Source of the DNA: Ranitomeya imitator
Taxonomy: Eukaryota
Assembly (NCBI RefSeq): GCF_032444005.1
Contig: NC_091289.1
Span: 171,554,001-171,618,000, forward strand
Length of the DNA stretch: 64,000 nucleotides
Direction of reading: 5' to 3'
Positions 29,710-55,699 of this stretch are shown piece after piece. Position 1 is the stretch's first letter, and every line of letters begins with the position of its first letter. The position numbers and the translations under genes are program-made. Under the pieces are notes generated by a model. The model had not been told where the DNA came from, ran no database searches, and saw only the letters and a list, made by a program, of their open reading frames with translations.

Positions 29710-30515
29710 GGTAGCCAAGATCCTGCAGATTTTCCAATGCTGGGGAGGCGCTATACCCTTATTTCTCAGCACTGTTAAAAAGCGGCGCTGAGGAATAAGT
29801 ACCCTTAACCGTTAAAAGGCATATCGGCGGTCGTTAAGGGGTTAATGCAAGAGTATCATATTTTGAAAACAAATAAACAAAAAAGAGAAAGCCCAATGGA
29901 TTTTAATAATGTTCTGTTTCAGTACGTGAGAAGGATCCCCTAAGCCTGGGGGTGCAGCAGAAAGATCCAGATGGAATAATGGAAGCTGTAGGTGCAAAAA
30001 GGCAAGAGGAGCAAAAGGGAATCACGGGATCTGATGAGATAGAGGTGAGCAAACGGCAGCAGGCGTGACAAGGAAGCCAAGGAGACTTGGGGTACCGTCA
30101 CACTATACGATTTACCTATGATCACGACCAGCGATATGACCTGGCCGTGATCATAGGTAAATCGTAGTGTGGTCGCTGGAGAGCTGTCACACAGCCGAAG
30201 TCCCCGGGTAACCAGGGTAAACATCGGGTTACTAAGCGCAGGACCGCGCTTAGTAGCCCTATGTTTACCCTGGTTACCAGCGTAAAAACAAACAAACAGC
30301 ACATACTTACATTCCGGTGTCTGTCCCTTGCCGTCTGTTTCCCGCACTCACTGACTGCCGGCCGTAAAGTGAAAGCACAGCACAGCGGTGACGTCACCGC
30401 TGTGCTCTGCTTTCACTTTACGGCCGGCAGTCACTGAGTGCGGGAAGCAGACTGCAAGGGACCTGACGGACACCAGAATGTAAGTATGTGCTGTTTTTTT
30501 TTTTTTAGTTTTACG

Positions 30516-31128
30516 CTTATTCATCAATGATCTGGTAGAAGGTTTACACAGTAAAATATCGATATTTGCAGATGATACAAAACTATGTAAAGCAGTTAAT
30601 ACAAGAGAAGATAGTATTCTGCTACAGATGGATCTGGATAAGTTGGAAACTTGGGCTGAAAGGTGGCAGATGAGGTTTAACAATGATAAATGTAAGGTTA
30701 TACACATGGGAAGAAGGAATCAATATCACCATTACACACTGAACGGGAAACCACTGGGTAAATCTGACAGGGAGAAGGACTTGGGGATCCTAGTTAATGA
30801 TAAACTTACCTGGAGCAGCCAGTGCCAGGCAGCAGCTGCCAAGGCAAACAGGATCATGGGGTGCATTAAAAGAGGTCTGGATACACATGATGAGAGCATT
30901 ATACTGCCTCTGTACAAATCCCTAGTTAGACCGCACATGGAGTACTGTGTCCAGTTTTGGGCACCGGTGCTCAGGAAGGATATAATGGAACTAGAGAGAG
31001 TACAAAGGAGGGCAACAAAATTAATAAAGGGGATGGGAGAACTACAATACCCAGATAGATTAGCAAAATTAGGATTATTTAGTCTAGAAAAAAAAAAGAC
31101 GACTGAGGGGCGATCTAATAACCATGTA
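30516..31128 (+). mobile_element. CR1 LINE ORF2 3' fragment (RT C-terminus), interrupted by a Helitron
   Basis: FINDL...FADDTKL...WQMRFNNDKCKVIHMG...LYKSLVRPHMEYCVQFW...LERVQRRATK...LGLFSLEK.RRLRGDLITMY. Confidence 0.92.
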
Positions 31129-31655
31129 TCTATATATATAATTGTCTAAGGGTTTTTCCGTCTGTCTGTCTGTCTTTCTGTCTGTCTGTCTGTCCTGGAA
31201 ATCCCGGCTCTCTGATTGGTCGAGGCCGCCAGGCCTCAACCAATCAGAGACCGGCACAGCATCGACGTAGAAATCCCGCGTCTCTGATTGTTCGAGGCCG
31301 CCAGGCCTCGACCAATCAGCAACGGGCACAGCGACGATGATGTCATAAAGGACGTAGAAATCCCGTGTCTGATTGGTCGAGGCCGCCAGGCCTCGACCAA
31401 TCAGCAACGGGCACAGCGATGATGATGTCATAAAGGACATAGACATCTCACGTTTCTGATTCAGCGACGGGCACAGTATCGACGTAGATGTCATAATGGT
31501 TGCCATGGCGACGATGATGTCATAAAGGTTGCCTCGACCAATCAGCGATGGGCACAGTGTGCCGTGAATTCTGGAATCATCATTGTCCACATACTACGGG
31601 GACATGCATATTCTAGAATACCCGATGCGTTAGAATCGGGCCACAAGACTTCTAG
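31129..31655 (+). mobile_element. Non-autonomous Helitron with altered 3' end
   Basis: A|TC 5' junction; 3' hairpin cccgat-N8-atcggg (31621-31640), then CTAG at 31652; internal CCAAT palindromes. Confidence 0.8.
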
Positions 31656-31730
31656 CTAGCTTGGACCGCGCTATACAGCCGCGGCGGCTAGCCGCTATAC
31701 AGGCCGCTTTACTAGACTGGCCGGGGCGCA

Positions 31731-31858
31731 TCAATATAGAAGTGTCAGGAGGACTGATCAATATAGAAGTGTCAGGAGGACTGATCAATATAGAAGTGTC
31801 AGGAGGACTGATCAATATAGAAGTGTCAGGAGGACTGATCAATATAGAAGTGTCAGGA
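31731..31858 (+). repeat. 27-bp tandem array (atcaatatagaagtgtcaggaggactg); further copies at 32177-32237 (+) and 32630-32690 (-)
   Basis: Read directly. Confidence 0.92.
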
Positions 31859-31906
31859 GCCGCGCCCCGCCCGCCGGCGGGGCCTAGCTTCTGGACTTTT
31901 TTGCAG

Positions 31907-31989
31907 ATCTTCTTTGAGGATGAAATGTCTCAGTCCTTTTACCAGGTAGATCCGGACAAGACATTACTCCAGGTCCTGCAGCACAGCAG
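31907..31989 (+). pseudogene. Inverted duplicate of TTC4 exon 9 with acceptor and donor
   Basis: Matches the reverse complement of 36762-36844, flanked by ttttttgcag and gtgagg. Confidence 0.93.
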
Positions 31990-32245
31990 GTGAGGACTAC
32001 AGCATACTTAGGAATGAATGATGTGTGTTGTCAGCCGGCGTCCGCCGGCGTGTATTATTAGGTTCTGTAGAAGGACGTAGATCTGGGGATTTATTATGAT
32101 GGAATATAGGCTGAACTGGATGGAAAAAAAAGCTAGCCGCTATACAGGCCGCTTTACTAGACTGGCCGGGGCGCATCAATATAGAAGTGTCAGGAGGACT
32201 GATCAATATAGAAGTGTCAGGAGGACTGATCAATATAAGGCCGCC

Positions 32246-32567
32246 GCCCCATTGCCTTCCTCTGAATCAATATGTTACGACATAGGCCTTCAGTCTAAAA
32301 AGCAAAAAAAGAATTCCAGCTCGACGAGGCAGTGAAAAGTAAAAATTCAGTCTAAAAAACATAAAACTTTTCAAGCTCGACAAAATTATTTAAAAAAAAA
32401 AAAAGTTTGATTACTCTGTAACTTAGGAAAAAACAACACACATCATTCATTCCTAAGTATGCTGTAGTCCTCACCTGCTGTGCTGCAGGACCTGGAGTAA
32501 TGTCTTGTCCGGATCTACCTGGTAAAAGGACTGAGACATTTCATCCTCAAAGAAGATCTGCAAAAAA
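32246..32567 (-). pseudogene. Direct duplicate of TTC4 exon 9 (32475-32557) plus about 230 nt of intron 9
   Basis: Matches 36532-36854; the only difference I saw is one base in an A-run (13 vs 14). Confidence 0.93.
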
Positions 32568-32738
32568 GTCCAGAAGCTAGGCCTAGCGCGGCGCGGCTCC
32601 GCCCGGCGCCCCCGGGCTGCGGCGTTGCATTCTATATTGATCAGTCCTCCTGACACTTCTATATTGATCAGTCCTCCTGACACTTCAATATTCTATGCGT
32701 AGAAGTAGAAGTGACCCGCATAGGCGGGTACGGCCGTG

Positions 32739-32846
32739 GCAATTCCAGATTCTCACTGCCCTAACAGTAAAGAATCCTCTTCTATGTTGGTGGAAAAACC
32801 TTCTCTCCTCCAGACGCAAAGAATGCCCCCTTGTGCCCGTCACCTT
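32739..32846 (-). mobile_element. Inverted CR1 ORF2 C-terminal fragment
   Basis: VTGTRGHSLRLEERRFFHQHRRGFFTVRAVRIWN is the typical CR1 ORF2 terminus. Confidence 0.85.
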
Positions 32847-34129
32847 AGCGAAATACTTTGCAGCTGTAATGCACATTACAACCACTAGATGGCACATGCA
32901 ACAAACCACATCGAAAAATAAATCACTTCGACCAAGGTGTATGGTAAGGAAGAATGCACCAATATAGGTTTATAAAATAAGCTTTAAAAAAGGAGTAATG
33001 AAAAACAATATAAATATCTTTATTATTACATAGTTAAAAATAATAAAAACAAGTTATTTGGTAAAAGAACGTTCGTTCCTAAATGTCAGCGCCGAGCTAA
33101 GCAGTGCAACAAAAAAGAAAAGGTGGATGTCAATAATTGGGGTGTGCAAACCACAGAAAATGAGACTCTGGACAACTCCCAGATGGAGTCTATCATACAT
33201 GAATCTGAAGAAAAACAGATATCAAGGATTGATTAGAGCAGCGCAACAGATCTACAATTGTTCTGAATAGCTGGGGTAGATTCCTAATTCTGGTGCCCAT
33301 ACTTTAGTTACATTCAATCTTTACATATGTAGCTAAACTATTTGGTACTTCTATAAAGAATTACTTGGGAGTATCATTAATCTATGCAGAGCACTATCTC
33401 TGTTATTTTATATAACTTATTTTTTTGGACCATTAGACGGGGGAAAATAGGAAAAACATTTATCCTATTAATACTTCCCTGGAGGTGTAAAGTGGAAGGG
33501 CCATTATCACTAATTTTAATGTACTAGAGTAGAATAGAGAGGTAATAAATCAGTTGTTGGTGTTTCTCTGCAGTGTGTATTATACACACATAGCTCTACT
33601 ACATGTAAATCTACAGACATACACAGCTCTGCTACATGTACAATTACACACACACAGCTCTGTTACATGCACATTTGCATACACACACACACACATACAC
33701 ACAACTTAACTCGTGCCCTGGCTGGTTGACTCGAGCAAGGATTGTGGCCCCACTGTACCACGAACCAGACTACCCTGGAAGGGCGTGACTAAGCAGCTAC
33801 CTTGGTATTCACTGGAGCCTCTAGTGGTGAGGTCAGGCTTGTGCGGCAGGTACCACTCCAGGGCGGTGTCTGGCTGTGGCTGCTGATCCCACTGGGGGAC
33901 GGAACACTGGTGACAGGTGCGGGCAAGTACAGACGAGCACAACTTGTACTTCTGGCATGCAGGCGGGCGGGCACGGCTGGCGAGCCTGTAACTGGTTCGG
34001 GTAGGACAGGAACATAGGCAGGTACGAGTGGGAAAAGGGAACAGGTACGAACTAGTTCAGACTGAAGGGACAGGAACCAGTAGGATCCAGCACAGACTAA
34101 AGGGACAGGAACCGCAGGGATCAGAGCAG

Positions 34130-35876: not shown

Positions 35877-36761
35877 CTAGGAAAAGACAAGACAGCAATA
35901 AGTATAGTACAGCAATGATCAACTTATTCATTCGACACAAACACAATATTAAAAGAGTAACTACATTTTTTTTGTTGAATTTTTTTATGAATCTTTCTAC
36001 TCACTTTACTAGAGAATCTGTCTTCATGCTTCTAAAAAAAAGTGCATGTAATTGACTTCCAGGCTCCTGCTTTTCCCTTCTTTTTGGCTGCCTTCAGCTG
36101 CATGAATATCAGAGCATATTCATTTGGAGTACAGATGATGGCAGTGAAAGGATCAGCAACGATCTCCTCTGCTGAGTGTTGTGCTTCCAGAACTCTCTCC
36201 TGCAGCAGCTTACTTCCAGAGTTAGTGAAACACAAGCACTGGGCCGACACATCACTGCCATCATCTGTACTCCAAACGAGAATGGTCTGATATCACTGCA
36301 GCTGAAGGCAGACAAACAAACTGGGGAACATCACGTGATTGGAAGTCACTTCCATGCGATTTGGTTTTTTTTTTTGTTTTTTTTTTTTTACAGGCATGAA
36401 GACAAATCTCCAGAAAAAGTGATTTACAAAATGTTATAACTGTGATAGGACATTGATCCAGGAAGCTAGTCTGAATACTGTATGTGGAGTTGGGACGGAA
36501 GTTTTCCCTTAATATGGGGCAATTAGCATCTGCCCCATTGCCTTCCTCTGAATCAATATGTTACGACATAGGCCTTCAGTCTAAAAAGCAAAAAAAGAAT
36601 TCCAGCTCGACGAGGCAGTGAAAAGTAAAAATTCAGTCTAAAAAACATAAAACTTTTCAAGCTCGACAAAATTATTTAAAAAAAAAAAAAAGTTTGATTA
36701 CTCTGTAACTTAGGAAAAAACAACACACATCATTCATTCCTAAGTATGCTGTAGTCCTCAC

Positions 36762-36844
36762 CTGCTGTGCTGCAGGACCTGGAGTAATGTCTTGTCCGGA
36801 TCTACCTGGTAAAAGGACTGAGACATTTCATCCTCAAAGAAGAT
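36762..36844 (-). CDS. TTC4: TTC4 coding exon 9 (source of the duplicated copies at 31.9 and 32.5 kb)
   Basis: Poly-T gcag|...|gtgagg. Encodes IFFEDEMSQSFYQVDPDKTLLQVLQHSR. Confidence 0.93.
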
Positions 36845-37612
36845 CTGCAAAAAAAAAAAAAGATGAGATTGTAGACATTCTCCCTGCACTAGTGCATAAA
36901 TCAAGCAGACGAAGCACTAGGTATACATGTTGTTCCCATGTGATGGATACAGCTATTTGATTTTAATAATGGAGAACTATGTCTCTATTAAATTGTTGAC
37001 CACCTTATCATGTGTCATGTTGCTGGACTTATAGTTATGAGCTGTAATTTGTGGGGGAACCTAAAAAGTGTTCAGCTCCATGGGGAAAATTAAAGGGTTT
37101 GTCCACTTTATTCTATCAGATGTGTTGGGAGGACATGATTTTGTGGTCCTTACTGGGGATGGTGCTGTCCAGCAGCCACGTCATTATGTTGTCTTCTGAC
37201 AGGAGCCTCGCAAACCGCCTGCTACCCAACTGCACCCTGATTCCTCTTTTGATTAGTCAGCCTGATGTGATGTCATCGTTGAGGTGTGATGTCATACCAG
37301 GCAGGCTACTCACAAGAGAAGCTGTGGATGCCGGCAGATGGCAGGGCTCCGTTCTGGCAGTCGTAGATTACTAACGTGGTCCTGTGAATCGATTTTCACC
37401 ATCTCTAGTACGCACTAACATTAGGTGATACAATTTAGTCAGTGACCCCTCTTTTGAGAGGCCTGTTACTGCAGCCTTCATCACAGGACTTCATCAACAT
37501 GGCCGCTGACGAAGGAGCCTGTTATGGGACCTGTCCGTCCGCCTCCAACTGAAACCACTGCACATGAAAACTAAAGACGTGACTACTTTGCAGAACGACT
37601 GTCTGTGCTGAC

Positions 37613-41073: not shown

Positions 41074-41165
41074 CTGCGCAATCAAGATTAAAGGGATTGT
41101 ATGACATCACAAAAAAAATTGCTCTCCTCCATCAACTGGATCTGGCATTACAGCTCTTGACGAAC

Positions 41166-42570
41166 CAGAGCCCTGCAAACCACATCCTACCTGGGCCAGG
41201 GTCCTGCAAACCACATCCGACCTGGGCCAGAGCCCTGCAAACCACATCCGACCTGGGCCAGAGCCCTGCAAACCACATCCGACCTGGGCCAGAGCCCTGC
41301 AAACCACATCCGACCTGGGCCAGAGCCCTGCAAACCACATCCGACCTGGGCCAGAGCCCTGCAAACCACATCCGACCTGGGCCAGAGCCCTGCAAACCAC
41401 ATCCGACCTGGGCCAGAGCCCTGCAAACCACATCCGACCTGGGCCAGAGCCCTGCAAACCACATCCGACCTGGGCCAGAGCCCTGCAAACCACATCCGAC
41501 CTGGGCCAGAGCCCTGCAAACCACATCCGACCTGGGCCAGAGCCCTGCAAACCACATCCGACCTGGGCCAGAGCCCTGCAAACCACATCCGACCTGGGCC
41601 AGAGCCCTGCAAACCACATCCGACCTGGGCCAGGGTCCTGCAAACCACATCCGACCTGGGCCAGAGCCCTGCAAACCACATCCGACCTGGGCCAGGGTCC
41701 TGCAAACCACATCCGACCTGGGCCAGGGTCCTGCAAACCACATCCGACCTGGGCCAGGGTCCTGCAAACCACATCCGACCTGGGCCAGGGTCCTGCAAAC
41801 CACATCCGACCTGGGCCAGGGTCCTGCAAACCACATCCGACCTGGGCCAGGGTCCTGCAAACCACATCCGACCTGGGCCAGGGTCCTGCAAACCACATCC
41901 GACCTGGGCCAGGGTCCTGCAAACCACATCCGACCTGGGCCAGAGCCCTGCAAACCACATCCGACCTGGGCCAGAGCCCTGCAAACCACATCCGACCTGG
42001 GCCAGAGCCCTGCAAACCACATCCGACCTGGGCCAGGGTCCTGCAAACCACATCCGACCTGGGCCAGGGTCCTGCAAACCACATCCGACCTGGGCCAGGG
42101 TCCTGCAAACCACATCCGACCTGGGCCAGGGTCCTGCAAACCACATCCGACCTGGGCCAGGGTCCTGCAAACCACATCCGACCTGGGCCAGGGTCCTGCA
42201 AACCACATCCGACCTGGGCCAGGGTCCTGCAAACCACATCCGACCTGGGCCAGGGTCCTGCAAACCACATCCGACCTGGGCCAGGGTCCTGCAAACCACA
42301 TCCGACCTGGGCCAGGGTCCTGCAAACCACATCCGACCTGGGCCAGGGTCCTGCAAACCACATCCGACCTGGGCCAGGGTCCTGCAAACCACATCCGACC
42401 TGGGCCAGGGTCCTGCAAACCACATCCGACCTGGGCCAGGGTCCTGCAAACCACATCCGACCTGGGCCAGGGTCCTGCAAACCACATCCGACCTGGGCCA
42501 GGGTCCTGCAAACCACATCCGACCTGGGCCAGGGTCCTGCAAACCACATCCGACCTGGGCCAGGGTCCTG
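41166..42570. repeat. 31-bp minisatellite, about 45 copies, in TTC4 intron 2
   Basis: Unit cca[gagccc/gggtcc]tgcaaaccacatccgacctggg. Confidence 0.97.
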
Positions 42571-52058: not shown

Positions 52059-53447
52059 ATGAGTAGGCTGCTGAGGTCATCACTACCCCATCTAGTGGCC
52101 ATCAGAGCGTATGGCAATGACTCATCCAAAGTTAGGCGCCACCTGCTGTCCAGGATTTACCAGCCAGGAAATCTGTGGGCAGAAAACCCGTCTGAAATTG
52201 AAGACAAATCAAACATGCTCTCCAATAAGAGTCAGAGATTTATGTTCAAAGCAGGATTAATCCGACCCACCAGTCCCGGATGTTTCCACTATTTGCCCCC
52301 TACTGTACGCTCAATGGAGAAACTCATTAGGCTGATAGATCGGGCAATGCAGGAGATCGGAGGGCAGAAGATTGACATGGCGACTCTTTGCTCAGCAACT
52401 CTGTGGAAGCAAAGTGGACGCTGGGATCTGGTGGGAAAAGAGTTGCTGTGTTTGATGGACAGACACAATCAGGAATACTGCTTAGGGCCCACACATGAAG
52501 AGTCCGTCACCAATTTGGTCGCCGCAGAGGGCGGCATCAGCCACAAGAAGCTTCCTCTTCTGCTGTACCAGATCACCCGGAAATTCAGAGATGAAATGAG
52601 GCCGTGCTTTGGTTTGCTGCGCGGCAGGGAGTTTTACATGAAGGACATGTACACGTTTGATCTAACAGAGGAAGCCGCCTACGAGACGTATAACAACGTG
52701 TGTGATGCCTACTCTAATATATTCCACACCCTTGGCATGAAACATGTGAAAGTCCAAGCAGACACGGGAAATATAGGGGGCAAGATGTCGCATGAGTTTC
52801 ACCTCCCTGCCGGTATCGGTGAGGACAGGCTGATGGTCTGCGGCAGCTGTGATTTTGCCGCCAACATAGAGACATTGCATCCAGATGAGAGGAATTGTCC
52901 TAGTTGTGGAGGCGAGCTGGCAGAAAGTAAGGGCATTGAGATCGGGCACACCTTCTACCTCGGGACCAAGTACTCGCAGGTTTTCAATGCCGTATGTCAC
53001 GATGCCCAGAACAAACCCGTTGTGGCCGAAATGGGCTGCTATGGCATTGGCGTATCACGGCTGTTGGCGGCATCTATAGAAGTTCTTTCTACCGAGGAGG
53101 AGATTCACTGGCCAAGTCTGATTGCCCCATACCAGATTTGTCTCATTCCCCCTAAAAAGGGAAGCAAGGAGACGGCGGCATCATTGGTCGCAGAGGAACT
53201 GTACGACTCTATATGCGCCATTCCTCACATGAGAAATGAGGCCGTTTTAGATGATAGAGATCATTTAACTATTGGAAAAAGGGTAAAGGAAGCTCACATG
53301 ATGGGTTACCCCCATGTTATTGTCATAGGCAAAAAGGCTTTAGAGAGCCCTTCGCTGTTTGAAGTGCGCAATCACAGGACTGGTGAAGTGCAGTTTCTTT
53401 CTAAAGACGAATTGTTAGGCTTTATACAGTCAATTCATGTCATCTAG
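52059..53447 (+). CDS. PARS2: Mitochondrial prolyl-tRNA synthetase, single coding exon, 462 aa
   Basis: Acceptor tttttcag|52051, then ATG at 52059. Arg/Ser/Leu-rich N-terminus suggests a mitochondrial presequence. Class II aaRS motif 2 (QITRKFRDEMRPCFGLLRGREFYMKD), motif 3 (MGCYGIGVSRL), C-terminal anticodon-binding domain. Confidence 0.97.
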   Translation: MSRLLRSSLPHLVAIRAYGNDSSKVRRHLLSRIYQPGNLWAENPSEIEDKSNMLSNKSQRFMFKAGLIRPTSPGCFHYLPPTVRSMEKLIRLIDRAMQEIGGQKIDMATLCSATLWKQSGRWDLVGKELLCLMDRHNQEYCLGPTHEESVTNLVAAEGGISHKKLPLLLYQITRKFRDEMRPCFGLLRGREFYMKDMYTFDLTEEAAYETYNNVCDAYSNIFHTLGMKHVKVQADTGNIGGKMSHEFHLPAGIGEDRLMVCGSCDFAANIETLHPDERNCPSCGGELAESKGIEIGHTFYLGTKYSQVFNAVCHDAQNKPVVAEMGCYGIGVSRLLAASIEVLSTEEEIHWPSLIAPYQICLIPPKKGSKETAASLVAEELYDSICAIPHMRNEAVLDDRDHLTIGKRVKEAHMMGYPHVIVIGKKALESPSLFEVRNHRTGEVQFLSKDELLGFIQSIHVI

Positions 53448-54420: not shown

Positions 54421-55049
54421 TCTCTTGAGAACTGTTAGAAAACCCCTTTAAAGATTTATTTCCATTGTAGCATGCTATCACCTATCCTATCGTGTTAGGG
54501 AATAACCTCTTAAATGTCAAACTAGGGTTTCTCCTTAAAGGTGAACCTGTCATGCAAAAAAATATTAACATGCTGATAAGAGGTTCATCTGCAGGTTAAT
54601 AGCATTCTAAAGCTGCTCGGCTGCTGCACTGAAAGCCCAGCTAATTGGAGGAAATGAACTTTATTTTTCGCGGCAGCCTCTGGCTTCCAGTTATAGAGGC
54701 GCAGCTTCAGTCACCGCTCATTAAGTAGTTAGCTGCGGCTGTAACTGCGCCCCGACACTGACTGACTGACGCATCTGCCGGTTGCGGGGATATGGGACGT
54801 CGGACACCGGTTCTGTGGTTTCCGGCTCACGGCCTCACCACTGGAAGTGCCGCATAGCCGCAAACTTACATGGGTGAGTAATGATGCCCCCTTTTCATAC
54901 ACCGCCTCAAAGAAGCTAACGATAAACGCGCATTGGGGTAATTTCTCCCATCAGTATCAGGCTGTTTAATGGATAGATGTTCATCTCTCTACTTATTGTG
55001 GCATTATATTTTTGGGATCTGGATTTTCTACCATGTGTTTTATAGCTTA

Positions 55050-55699
55050 CTAGATGGCAGCCCGATTCTAAAGAATCGGGAGTCTAGAATCCATATATAC
55101 TTTATTTATTCAAATGTAAGAATAATACAATTAATAAATAATAGTAAGAAAGAACAAAAATAATAGGCAGTATATGGAGAAAACACCAAACAAAAGTTCA
55201 AAATTGGTGTGAAAATGTCACTGAACCACTTCACAACTAAATATATATAGTTTTGGTAAATGGTATTATCATTTTTTTGACGAAATTCGGCAGGAGCTTG
55301 AAGAGCAACGTCACTGGGCCCGCCTCCACGCAGTAGAAACTTGCTGTGAGGTAAAAATTCAAAAATCACACCAAAATGGCGGGCGGAGTGTGTCACAGTA
55401 CGGCACGTTTCTGATTGGTCGCTCGCAGCAGGCGGCAACCAATCAGACACTGGACACTGTTGACGTCACTTATCTCCGGACATTATCTCCGCACATTAGC
55501 TCCGCACATTAGCTCCGGACATTACCTCCGGACATTAGCTCCGGACAAAGCCACGGAAGTTGGCACAAATTGCAGGAAGTAGTATTCTAGGCAATTAATC
55601 TCCGGACATTAGCTCCGGACATTAGCTCCGGACATTAGCTCCGGACAGGAAGTTGGCACAAATTGCAGGAAGTAGTATTCTAGGCAATTATATATTAGA
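55050..55699 (-). mobile_element. Complete non-autonomous Helitron
   Basis: Minus strand A|TC...cccgattct-tt-agaatcggg-ctgccat-CTAG|T, with canonical A/T target; internal 13-bp repeats. Confidence 0.85.

What the first reader, a model, noticed from the sequence alone, without database searches (positions are those of the whole stretch)
31129..32850. Helitron 3' end replaced by a scrambled cassette with two copies of TTC4 exon 9: possible exon capture in progress
Seen: the Helitron sits in a CR1 at an A|T site (ATM-Y codons) with a clean TC 5' junction. The intact Helitron at 55050 has hairpin + 7 nt + CTAG|T. Here the expected flank is missing. Instead come GC-rich filler, 27-bp arrays, an inverted exon 9 copy (31897-32031), a repeated block (31688-31780 = 32133-32237), a 322-bp direct copy of exon 9 plus intron (32246-32567), and the downstream part of the CR1 in inverted orientation (32739-32846). 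The donor exon is only 4.3 kb away and the copies are essentially identical, so the event is very recent. Established: Helitrons capture gene fragments, and template switching or Pol-theta end joining creates templated inserts with filler. Inference: aberrant resolution of the Helitron 3' junction copied neighbouring gene DNA, giving a rare snapshot of how capture starts in a vertebrate.
Basis: partly seen in the sequence, partly recalled or inferred. Interest (0 to 1): 0.85.

Follow-up and report, generated by a model that had tools for sequence, protein, structure and literature searches.

The report
Scrambled DNA patch beside a Helitron
Next to a small Helitron transposon in a frog-type genome sits a real, very young 1.2-kb patchwork holding two mirror-image copies of a TTC4 exon. 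It looks like a scar of error-prone DNA repair, and nothing shows that the Helitron has captured or moved the exon.

Summary
These are a CR1 LINE cut at ATGTA|T by a Helitron 5' end, three 27-bp arrays, a 135-bp inverted copy (100%) and a 322-bp direct copy (322/323) of the penultimate TTC4 exon region 4.3 kb away, a 106-bp repeated block, and an inverted CR1 piece.

Contigs from runs of one deeply sequenced sample support key junctions. The exon piece sits at about 3.8 times single-copy depth and branches exactly at both ends. An assembly artefact is therefore unlikely.

New points:
- The arrays and their flanks are not filler. They belong to a very high-copy repeat (U), and the GC-rich "filler" looks like U motifs.
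- A third CR1 piece (3'UTR) lies inside the cassette.
- The cassette lies about 3 kb downstream of the TTC4 stop codon, not in an intron.
- Both exon copies share one novel 16-nt junction inside a perfect 151-nt inverted repeat.
- No usable Helitron 3' end follows the exon copies, and the exon copy number shows no amplification.

Best reading: repair synthesis with template switching and fold-back at a break at or within 11 nt of the Helitron's 3' end. Helitron causation is possible but unproven. The scan had also noted this same stretch once (s1-295444).

The parts
30530..31129 (+). CR1 LINE fragment A (end of the RT domain to ...LITMY), cut at ATGTA|T
   Evidence: RVT_1 hit. Translation. The family runs on as AAGTATATAAGG after 31129.
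31129..31655 (+). Non-autonomous Helitron: 5' TC end, internal 72-85-bp repeats, terminator hairpin 31622-31640. It is family-like to 31644, then reads AAGACT+TCTAG. That is either a variant terminus ending at 31655, or a truncation at 31644 followed by filler.
   Evidence: 5' end matches the copy at 55699 minus. Hairpin fold. Family 3' end is CCAC+CATCTAG|T in 469-490 contigs. TRF.
31656..31896 (+). U1, about 1.05 units of the high-copy repeat U. It holds x motifs (31656-31729), the 27-bp array x4.8 (31730-31859), GC-rich x-like stretch G1 with an 8-bp hairpin directly before CTAG (31860-31887), and the start of the next unit, CTTCTGGAC (31888-31896).
   Evidence: Depth 7e5-9e5 in X1/X2 against 8-10 for unique flank. 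TRF. Motif alignments. Fold.
31897..32031 (+). E1: copy of the TTC4 penultimate exon with 10 nt of upstream intron and 42 nt of downstream intron, inverted relative to the donor
   Evidence: 135/135 to 36854-36720. X2 unitig covers exactly this span at depth 36.9 against 9.7 for single copy. X1 contig runs from 31897 to 32082 with 0 mismatches.
32032..32053 (.). GC-rich 22-nt joint f1. It is a 10-nt unit x2.2 and shares 12 nt (one mismatch) with G1.
32054..32128 (+).
   Evidence: Family continuations on both sides in the loose ends, and depth 2e5-6e5.
32132..32237 (+). U2: exact second copy of U1 31687-31792 (x2 motif, spacer, 2.3 array units)
   Evidence: 106/106.
32238..32245 (.). 8-nt joint f2 (AGGCCGCC), resembling the x2 motif
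   Evidence: p about 0.03 with flanks included.
32246..32567 (+). E2: direct copy of the donor, 187 nt of intron 9 plus the same 135 nt as E1
   Evidence: 322/323 to 36532-36854.
32568..32692 (-). Right arm: same U-to-exon junction as the left arm, then GC-rich G2, then 2.3 inverted array units. G2 differs from G1 only by indel blocks.
   Evidence: One X2 contig crosses G2 with a 10-nt insertion after 32626, at depth 15.7.
32693..32737 (.). Y: 45 nt of unplaced sequence with a 6-bp GC hairpin, weakly U-like
32738..32846 (-). B: internal CR1 fragment (VTGTRGH...VRIWN), inverted relative to A. About 50 nt of CR1 between A and B is missing.
32847..32894 (-). 37 nt of unrecognised sequence with a 7-bp palindrome, then CCATCTAG+T on the minus strand (32892-32884). 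The latter equals the Helitron terminus missing at 31645 plus the target T. It may be a displaced relic or a chance CTCF-like motif.
   Evidence: The 8-mer occurs 3 times in the window, which is chance level.
36532..36854 (-). Donor: TTC4 penultimate exon (83 nt, 36762-36844) with flanking intron. No Helitron or U repeat lies beside it.
55046..55699 (-). Second Helitron of the same family with both ends intact, used as reference

Best explanation
The block 31645-32894 is the scar of one or a few very recent DNA-level rearrangements. It is not a transposition product.

Proposed mechanism (inferred): a break arose at the boundary between the Helitron's 3' end and the downstream CR1. It was repaired by error-prone synthesis that switched template repeatedly. 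The templates were:
- the abundant U repeat (x motifs plus 27-bp arrays), used three times and also supplying most of the GC-rich joints;
- the TTC4 exon region 4.3 kb away;
- the broken CR1 itself (pieces C and B).

One fold-back step copied the already-formed U-to-exon junction onto the opposite strand. That gave the perfect 151-nt inverted repeat.

Shown: the segment map, the identities, the high copy number of U, read support for junctions, and the absence of amplification. Inferred: the break, the order of steps and the enzymes involved.

The Helitron is either a bystander or, at most, the site of the initial lesion (its terminator hairpin or its nick site).
For: - Segment map and identities.
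- Both exon copies share one novel 16-nt junction but have different far ends (135 nt and 322 nt). One arm was therefore copied from the other, or both from one intermediate.
- The copies include intron sequence and no poly(A) tail, so they are DNA-level copies.
- U is high-copy. Other genomic contigs also join array units head-to-head (joint 31780->32650), so the family is prone to fold-back.
- G1, G2, f1 and f2 resemble U motifs.
- Three non-contiguous pieces of a CR1 in mixed orientation lie around the cassette, with about 50 nt lost after the Helitron site. This fits a processed break.
- Junctions show 0-4 nt of microhomology or short inserts.
- Read support: an X1 contig crosses E1|f1|C with 0 mismatches. 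An X2 135-nt unitig ends exactly at both exon-copy boundaries at about 3.8 times single-copy depth. An X2 contig crosses the exon|U junction into G2. The flank unitig 32818-33531 is identical to the window.
- Literature: at yeast breaks, complex templated insertions are often two fragments of one locus in inverted orientation, made by microhomology-mediated template switching (PMC11724301). Break-induced replication prone to template switching gives ultra-complex events (PMC13065848).
Against: - The left edge coincides with the Helitron's last 11 nt, possibly exactly with its CTAG. By chance this is roughly a 1% event, although the scan selects for such coincidences.
- Most junctions lack clear microhomology, and several joints cannot be assigned to a template.
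- The 100-300-nt patches are longer than typical polymerase-theta inserts.
- Only one deeply sequenced sample exists, and it may be the individual that was assembled.
- No ancestral or intermediate allele was seen.
- In the second run search, X1 and X2 held only 0.29-0.37 of the sampled words of 32200-32760. Full-length support is therefore not shown.
Confidence: 0.5

Rival explanations
1. One reading: Helitron chemistry made the lesion. Either the 3' strand transfer failed at insertion, or RepHel later nicked the resident 3' end. The free end then primed copying of other DNA. This would be the first step of a filler-DNA-type gene capture.
For: - The scramble begins at or within 11 nt of the Helitron terminus. 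If AAGACT+TCTAG is a variant terminus, U is joined exactly at CTAG (31655|31656) with CTAG microhomology.
- The 5' junction is clean, while the target DNA to the right is deleted or rearranged.
- Non-canonical truncated and read-through 3' ends occur in Helraiser transposition (PMC4778049).
- The filler-DNA model of capture is established in the literature (PMC6544945).
Against: - No new hairpin+CTAG|T lies downstream of the exon copies.
- The G1 hairpin+CTAG lies upstream of the exon copies.
- No amplification: about 3.8 copies against 3 in the window.
- A possible relic of the normal terminus plus target T lies inverted at 32884-32892. If real, the insertion had been completed normally.
- Inverted paired inserts arise without any transposase (PMC11724301).
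Confidence: 0.22
2. U is itself a mobile element, either foldback-like or Helitron-derived, with a hairpin+CTAG end. It once sat in the T-run upstream of the TTC4 exon and carried the exon along by read-through. The two arms would then be two products with different stop points.
For: - A shared junction with different far ends (135 nt and 322 nt) is the classic mark of 3' transduction.
- G1 forms an 8-bp GC hairpin directly before CTAG.
- U is high-copy and also occurs head-to-head elsewhere.
- The junction falls inside the donor's T-run.
Against: - The donor locus holds no U.
- The outer ends of the two arms do not match, so there are no terminal repeats.
- G2 lacks the hairpin.
- After CTAG comes C, not T.
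- Two such insertions 400 nt apart, facing each other, is less economical than one fold-back.
- No further copies are indicated by depth.
Confidence: 0.12
3. Assembly or library artefact, for example a chimeric or fold-back long read.
For: - Another palindrome in this assembly was reported absent from the deep sample (note s1-292469, not re-tested here).
- G2 differs by 10 nt between the assembly and an X2 contig.
- The word share for the right half is low.
Against: - Contigs built from many reads (depth 14-37) support the E1|C junction, the exon|U junction and both boundaries of the 135-nt piece, and show about 3-4 copies of it.
- The arms are asymmetric, unlike missed-adapter palindromes.
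Confidence: 0.05

Closest known systems
Complex templated insertions at DNA breaks, with two fragments of one locus in inverted orientation (yeast Break-Ins study, PMC11724301); MMBIR and chromoanasynthesis-like template switching (PMC13065848, PMC8421209)
   Same: - Several short patches copied from near and distant templates.
- Two inverted copies from a single locus.
- Short or absent microhomology at the outer joints.
- A fold-back step.
   Different: - This is a germline-fixed or inherited structure in a vertebrate.
- The patches are longer (75-322 nt).
- One repeat family was used three times as template.
- It is anchored at a transposon end.
- The enzymes are untested.
Fold-back inverted duplications with a spacer (PMC3907307)
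   Same: Inverted arms separated by a unique spacer, and a novel junction present in both arms.
   Different: The scale is 151-nt arms against kilobases to megabases. The spacer here is itself a patchwork. There is no terminal deletion.
Helitron gene capture by 3'-end bypass or read-through (Helraiser, PMC4778049; bat Helitrons, PMC4224331)
   Same: Foreign gene DNA lies directly 3' of a Helitron whose normal 3' junction is lost.
   Different: - The captured DNA is not the Helitron's own flank.
- The donor has no Helitron.
- There is no de novo terminator after the exon copies.
- There are no extra copies.
Filler-DNA model of Helitron sequence acquisition (PMC6544945, citing Gorbunova and Levy 1997)
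   Same: Patches of host DNA laid in during repair of a break in or at the element.
   Different: The model predicts patches inside an element that keeps both ends and then amplifies. Here the 3' end is lost or bypassed, and no amplification is seen.

Membership tests
Helitron (canonical, the element at 31129-31655) | 5' TC end inserted after a host A | tested here: met
   a|TCTATATATATAATTG matches the 5' end of the copy at 55699 minus. The CR1 consensus is interrupted at ATGTA|T.
Helitron (canonical, the element at 31129-31655) | Subterminal hairpin about 10 nt before the 3' end | tested here: met
   cccgatgc/gaatcggg at 31622-31640. It is homologous to the hairpin of the second copy and folds.
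Helitron (canonical, the element at 31129-31655) | 3' CTAG followed by host T | tested here: inconclusive
   The family ends CCAC+CATCTAG|T. This copy reads CCAC+AAGACT+TCTAG and is followed by CTAGC, not T. It is either a variant terminus or a truncation at 31644.
Helitron end-bypass capture | Captured DNA was the 3' flank of a source Helitron | tested here: not met
   The donor at 36532-36854 and its flanks hold no Helitron or U repeat.
Helitron end-bypass capture | New terminator (hairpin + CTAG|T) downstream of the captured DNA | tested here: not met
   The only + strand hairpin+CTAG with a GC-rich stem after 31645 is G1 at 31884, upstream of both exon copies. The only other hit (32885) is a 6-bp AT-rich stem inside the unrecognised 37 nt, not followed by T.
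Helitron end-bypass capture | Chimeric element present at further loci | tested here: not met
   The exon unitig has depth 36.9 against 9.72 for single copy in X2, about 3.8 copies. The window itself holds 3. A whole-genome alignment was not possible.
Templated-insertion / template-switch repair scar | Inserted patches have identifiable templates elsewhere, in either orientation | tested here: met
   E1, E2, U2, the right arm, B and C all have templates. Y, the 37-nt stretch and parts of the GC joints do not.
Templated-insertion / template-switch repair scar | Microhomology at the switch points | tested here: inconclusive
   0-4 nt where both parents are known (CTAG at H|U, none at U|exon). 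Several junctions carry short inserts instead.
Templated-insertion / template-switch repair scar | Ancestral allele without the scar exists | not testable with these tools
   There is only one deep sample of the species. The related species' contigs do not cover the unique flank.
Foldback-type transposon | Matching terminal inverted arms made of subrepeats, with defined ends and a target duplication | tested here: not met
   The inner parts of the arms match (arrays, junction). The outer ends (31656-31729 against 32693-32737) do not, and there is no duplication.

The most novel reading that the evidence does not exclude
The lesion was made by Helitron transposition chemistry at the CTAG end, through failed 3' strand transfer or a RepHel nick. 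The locus would then be a natural, not yet mobilised intermediate of filler-DNA-type exon acquisition by a vertebrate Helitron, caught within about 1 Myr of the event.
Probability: 0.2. Interest if true: 0.7.

Novelty: new member of a known kind. Interest (0 to 1): 0.35.

Why it matters
It is a clean, base-resolved germline example of a micro-scale complex rearrangement, with at least 10 joints in 1.2 kb. Such events are mostly known from cancer cells and yeast assays.

If population data showed that the break came from the Helitron's 3' end, the locus would give a rare natural intermediate for the debated filler-DNA route of Helitron gene capture.

It also places a 151-bp perfect inverted repeat of a TTC4 exon about 0.4 to 1.1 kb beyond a probable poly(A) site on the TTC4 strand. 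Read-through transcripts could therefore form double-stranded RNA against TTC4. This is untested.

As it stands it is one locus without evidence of function or mobility.

Tried and rejected
- The second run search (32200-32760) gave shares of 0.29-0.37. These cannot be read cleanly, because even donor words are incompletely held.
- A protein-database search with the 110-aa ORF across the array, meant to fish out other U copies, found nothing.
- Rfam found nothing in 30400-33200.
- A paper search for the 27-bp unit found nothing.
- Searches of the scan's notes by sequence or words for U or similar cassettes gave nothing usable.
- I first read the minus-strand TGCCATCTAG+T at 32884-32894 as a perfect partition of the Helitron end. 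Re-indexing showed this copy has CCAC, not CTGC, so only 8-9 nt correspond. The 8-mer occurs at chance frequency in the window, twice inside a CCACTAGATGG motif. I downgraded this to 'suggestive'.
- The 37 nt between that motif and CR1 piece B do not align to the CR1 consensus (p = 0.76).
- No templates for Y, f1, f2 or the 37 nt were found within 24-40 kb at k >= 9 beyond chance.
- A retrocopy origin is rejected, because introns are present and there is no poly(A) tail.
- A missed-adapter palindrome is rejected, because the arms are asymmetric and reads support the structure.
Full report
**What is there**

- A CR1-type LINE runs on the + strand from about 30530 to 31129. It gives an RVT_1 hit and its ORF ends ...RLRGDLITMY.
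- In laid contigs the family continues AAGTATATAAGG after 31129. The LINE is therefore interrupted exactly at ATGTA|T.
- The interrupting sequence begins TCTATATATATAATTG. A second element on the minus strand (55699-55046) begins a|TCTAATATATAATTG. It ends with an 8-bp hairpin, then CTGCCAT, then CTAG|T. Both are small non-autonomous Helitrons of one family.
- Hundreds of contigs give the family 3' end as hairpin + CCAC + CATCTAG|T.
- The copy under study follows the family up to 31644 (hairpin 31622-31640, then CCAC). It then reads AAGACT-TCTAG-CTAG-CTTGGAC. The expected T plus CR1 continuation is absent.

**The cassette, segment by segment**

1. 31656-31896, U1. It holds two related GC-rich x motifs, a spacer, a perfect 27-bp array of 4.8 units, and a GC-rich stretch G1 that folds into an 8-bp hairpin directly before CTAG. 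It ends with CTTCTGGAC, which looks like the start of the next U unit: compare CTAG-CTAG-CTTGGAC at 31652-31666.
2. 31897-32031, E1, 135/135 identical to the reverse complement of 36720-36854.
3. 32032-32053, a 22-nt GC-rich joint.
4. The family continues on both sides.
5. 32132-32237, U2, 106/106 identical to 31687-31792.
6. 32238-32245, an 8-nt joint.
7. 32246-32567, E2, 322/323 identical to 36532-36854. The one difference is a homopolymer A.
8. 32568-32692, the same U-to-exon junction, a GC-rich stretch G2 and 2.3 array units, all inverted.
9. 32693-32737, 45 unplaced nt.
10. 32738-32846, an internal CR1 fragment, inverted.
11. From 32847 onward, single-copy flank.

The two arms form a perfect 151-nt inverted repeat, 31881-32031 against 32433-32583. 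It includes a 16-nt novel junction (GGCCTAGCTTCTGGAC) and has a 401-nt spacer.

**Gene context**

- The copied exon encodes IFFEDEMSQSFYQVDPDKTLLQVLQHS(R). This aligns with residues 111-138 of the human TTC4 C-terminal domain (6hfo_A, E = 0.003).
- TTC4 lies on the minus strand. Its last exon, ending ...KKLHRIR*, is at about 35878-35775.
- The cassette is therefore about 3 kb downstream of the stop codon, not in an intron.
- A cDNA-type run (X19, which carries SMART oligo ends) has a contig that stops at 32996 with 18 unlaid letters. This is 25 nt past an AATAAA on the minus strand. A poly(A) site probably lies about 100 nt from the cassette's right edge.

**Is it real?**

Only the one read-laying run used Logan contigs. 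In the one deep sample of the species (S1; runs X1 and X2) the unique right flank 32818-33531 is one unitig, identical to the window, at depth 7.8 and 9.7. Four results bear on the cassette:

- An X1 contig covers 31897-32082 without a mismatch, so it crosses the E1|joint|C junction.
- In X2 the 135-nt exon piece is a separate unitig covering exactly 31897-32031 at depth 36.9, about 3.8 times single copy. The graph branches at exactly both assembled boundaries. About 3-4 copies exist, and the window holds 3.
- One X2 contig (depth 15.7) crosses G2 with a 10-nt insertion after 32626. From the bin depth (5.95 over 32459-32585) I infer that it starts near 32538, one k-mer before the exon|U junction. 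This is an inference, not a listed piece.
They are best explained as donor intron 8, joined through after short dead-end branches were clipped. This too is inference.

An assembly artefact is therefore unlikely (about 5%). Full-length support is not shown, and S1 may be the assembled individual. A second run search on 32200-32760 gave shares of only 0.29-0.37, too low to interpret. The related species (X3) does not cover the unique flank, so no ancestral allele could be sought.

**What changes the reading**

- The arrays and their flanks are not event-specific filler. Summed depth over 31697-31823, 32078-32204 and 32586-32712 is 4e5-9e5 in S1, against 8-10 for single-copy flank. It is also high in the cDNA run and about 100-fold lower in the related species. 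U is thus a very abundant, lineage-enriched repeat.
- Other contigs join array units head-to-head (joint 31780->32650, depth 58-239), so U forms inverted arrangements elsewhere too.
- G1 aligns with the x1 motif. G1 and G2 are homologous and differ only by indel blocks. The small joints f1 and f2 resemble x motifs, though each is individually weak (p 0.03-0.15).
- Most of what looked like filler is therefore U sequence.
- Neither the donor nor its flanks carry a Helitron or U.
- On the + strand no GC-rich hairpin+CTAG follows the exon copies.

**Mechanism**

- The shared novel junction with different far ends (135 nt and 322 nt) means one arm was copied from the other or both from one intermediate.
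- The copies carry intron sequence and no poly(A) tail, so copying was at the DNA level.
- Three non-contiguous CR1 pieces in mixed orientation, with about 50 nt lost right after the Helitron site, point to a processed break in the CR1 3' part.
- Junctions have 0-4 nt of microhomology or short inserts.

I therefore favour repair synthesis with serial template switching plus one fold-back step, using U repeatedly as template (confidence 0.5).

This matches a known kind. At yeast breaks, complex templated insertions are typically two fragments of one locus in inverted orientation, made by microhomology-mediated template switching and captured by end joining (PMC11724301, section 'Distant inverted repeats'). 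Template-switch-prone break-induced replication gives ultra-complex events in human cells (PMC13065848). Fold-back gives inverted duplications with spacers (PMC3907307).

**Role of the Helitron**

The left edge of the scramble lies at 31644|31645, or exactly at CTAG (31655|31656) if AAGACT+TCTAG is a variant terminus. In the second case U is joined with CTAG microhomology. That coincidence is about 1% by chance, but the scan selects for such cases. Non-canonical 3' ends do occur with Helraiser (PMC4778049), and a filler-DNA route of capture has been proposed (PMC6544945).

Against a completed or ongoing capture:
- no terminator lies after the exon copies;
- the exon piece has not been amplified;
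- the end-bypass criterion is not met.

A 9-mer equal to the missing terminus plus target T (CCATCTAG+T) lies inverted at 32892-32884, 37 nt from the inverted CR1 piece. If it is a relic, the insertion had been completed normally and the scramble came later. However, the 8-mer occurs at chance frequency in the window, and here it sits in a CCACTAGATGGCA motif. The 37 nt are not CR1-like. I rate the relic reading at about 35-40%.

A third option is that U is itself mobile and transduced the exon. This is less economical: the donor holds no U, the outer ends of the arms do not match, and G2 lacks the hairpin.

**Age**

There are no substitutions in 135 + 322 + 106 nt of duplicated sequence, which implies a very recent origin. 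Gene conversion between the arms and the donor could also keep them identical. G1 and G2 differ by indels, and the S1 contig differs from the assembly by 10 nt there. This region is hypervariable, error-prone in copying, or imperfectly assembled.

**Verdict**

This is a new instance of a known kind of repair scar, and the Helitron link is open and testable.

Noticed in passing
window 31661-31993 (+) and 32471-32683 (-): Both arms are open reading frames running from the 27-bp array, read as (INIEVSGGL)n, through the GC-rich stretch and the splice acceptor into the native TTC4 exon frame (110 aa and 70 aa). This is probably coincidence. The 10-nt insertion seen in the S1 contig would break the right-arm frame.
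   Followed up: partly
window 32996-33725 (minus strand): The cDNA-type run X19 has contigs here at depth about 270-375. One ends at 32996, 25 nt after an AATAAA, with 18 unlaid letters. This is a likely poly(A) site, perhaps of a long TTC4 3'UTR. The contig is about 3% diverged from the window.
   Followed up: partly
window 31644 -> 31129 (joints in X19): cDNA-run contigs join the Helitron 3' end (…CCAC CATCTAG) directly to the 5' end (TCTATAT…). These are head-to-tail junctions, as in tandem Helitrons or circular intermediates.
   Followed up: no
window 32881-32893 (+), 52088-52098 (+), 55047-55060 (+): CCACTAGATGGCA reads like a CTCF-type core motif (my own knowledge of the consensus). The Helitron 3' terminus plus flank gives a near-match (TTACTAGATGGCAG), so this Helitron family might seed CTCF-like sites.
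   Followed up: no
window 41150-42560: A long, regular tandem array with a 31-bp period, about 45 units containing CAAACCACATC, in a GC-rich, strongly skewed stretch.
   Followed up: no
Composition there is 56% GC with strong AT skew.
   Followed up: no
window 30090-30500: Two nested near-perfect palindromes directly upstream of the CR1, with centres near 30140 and 30390. They look MITE- or foldback-like.
   Followed up: no
window 55440-55690 (minus strand): The intact reference Helitron carries its own internal short tandem array (GTCCGGAGCTAAT-type units) and a duplicated 100-nt block. This fits the scan's earlier notes of Helitrons with internal satellites in this genome.
   Followed up: no
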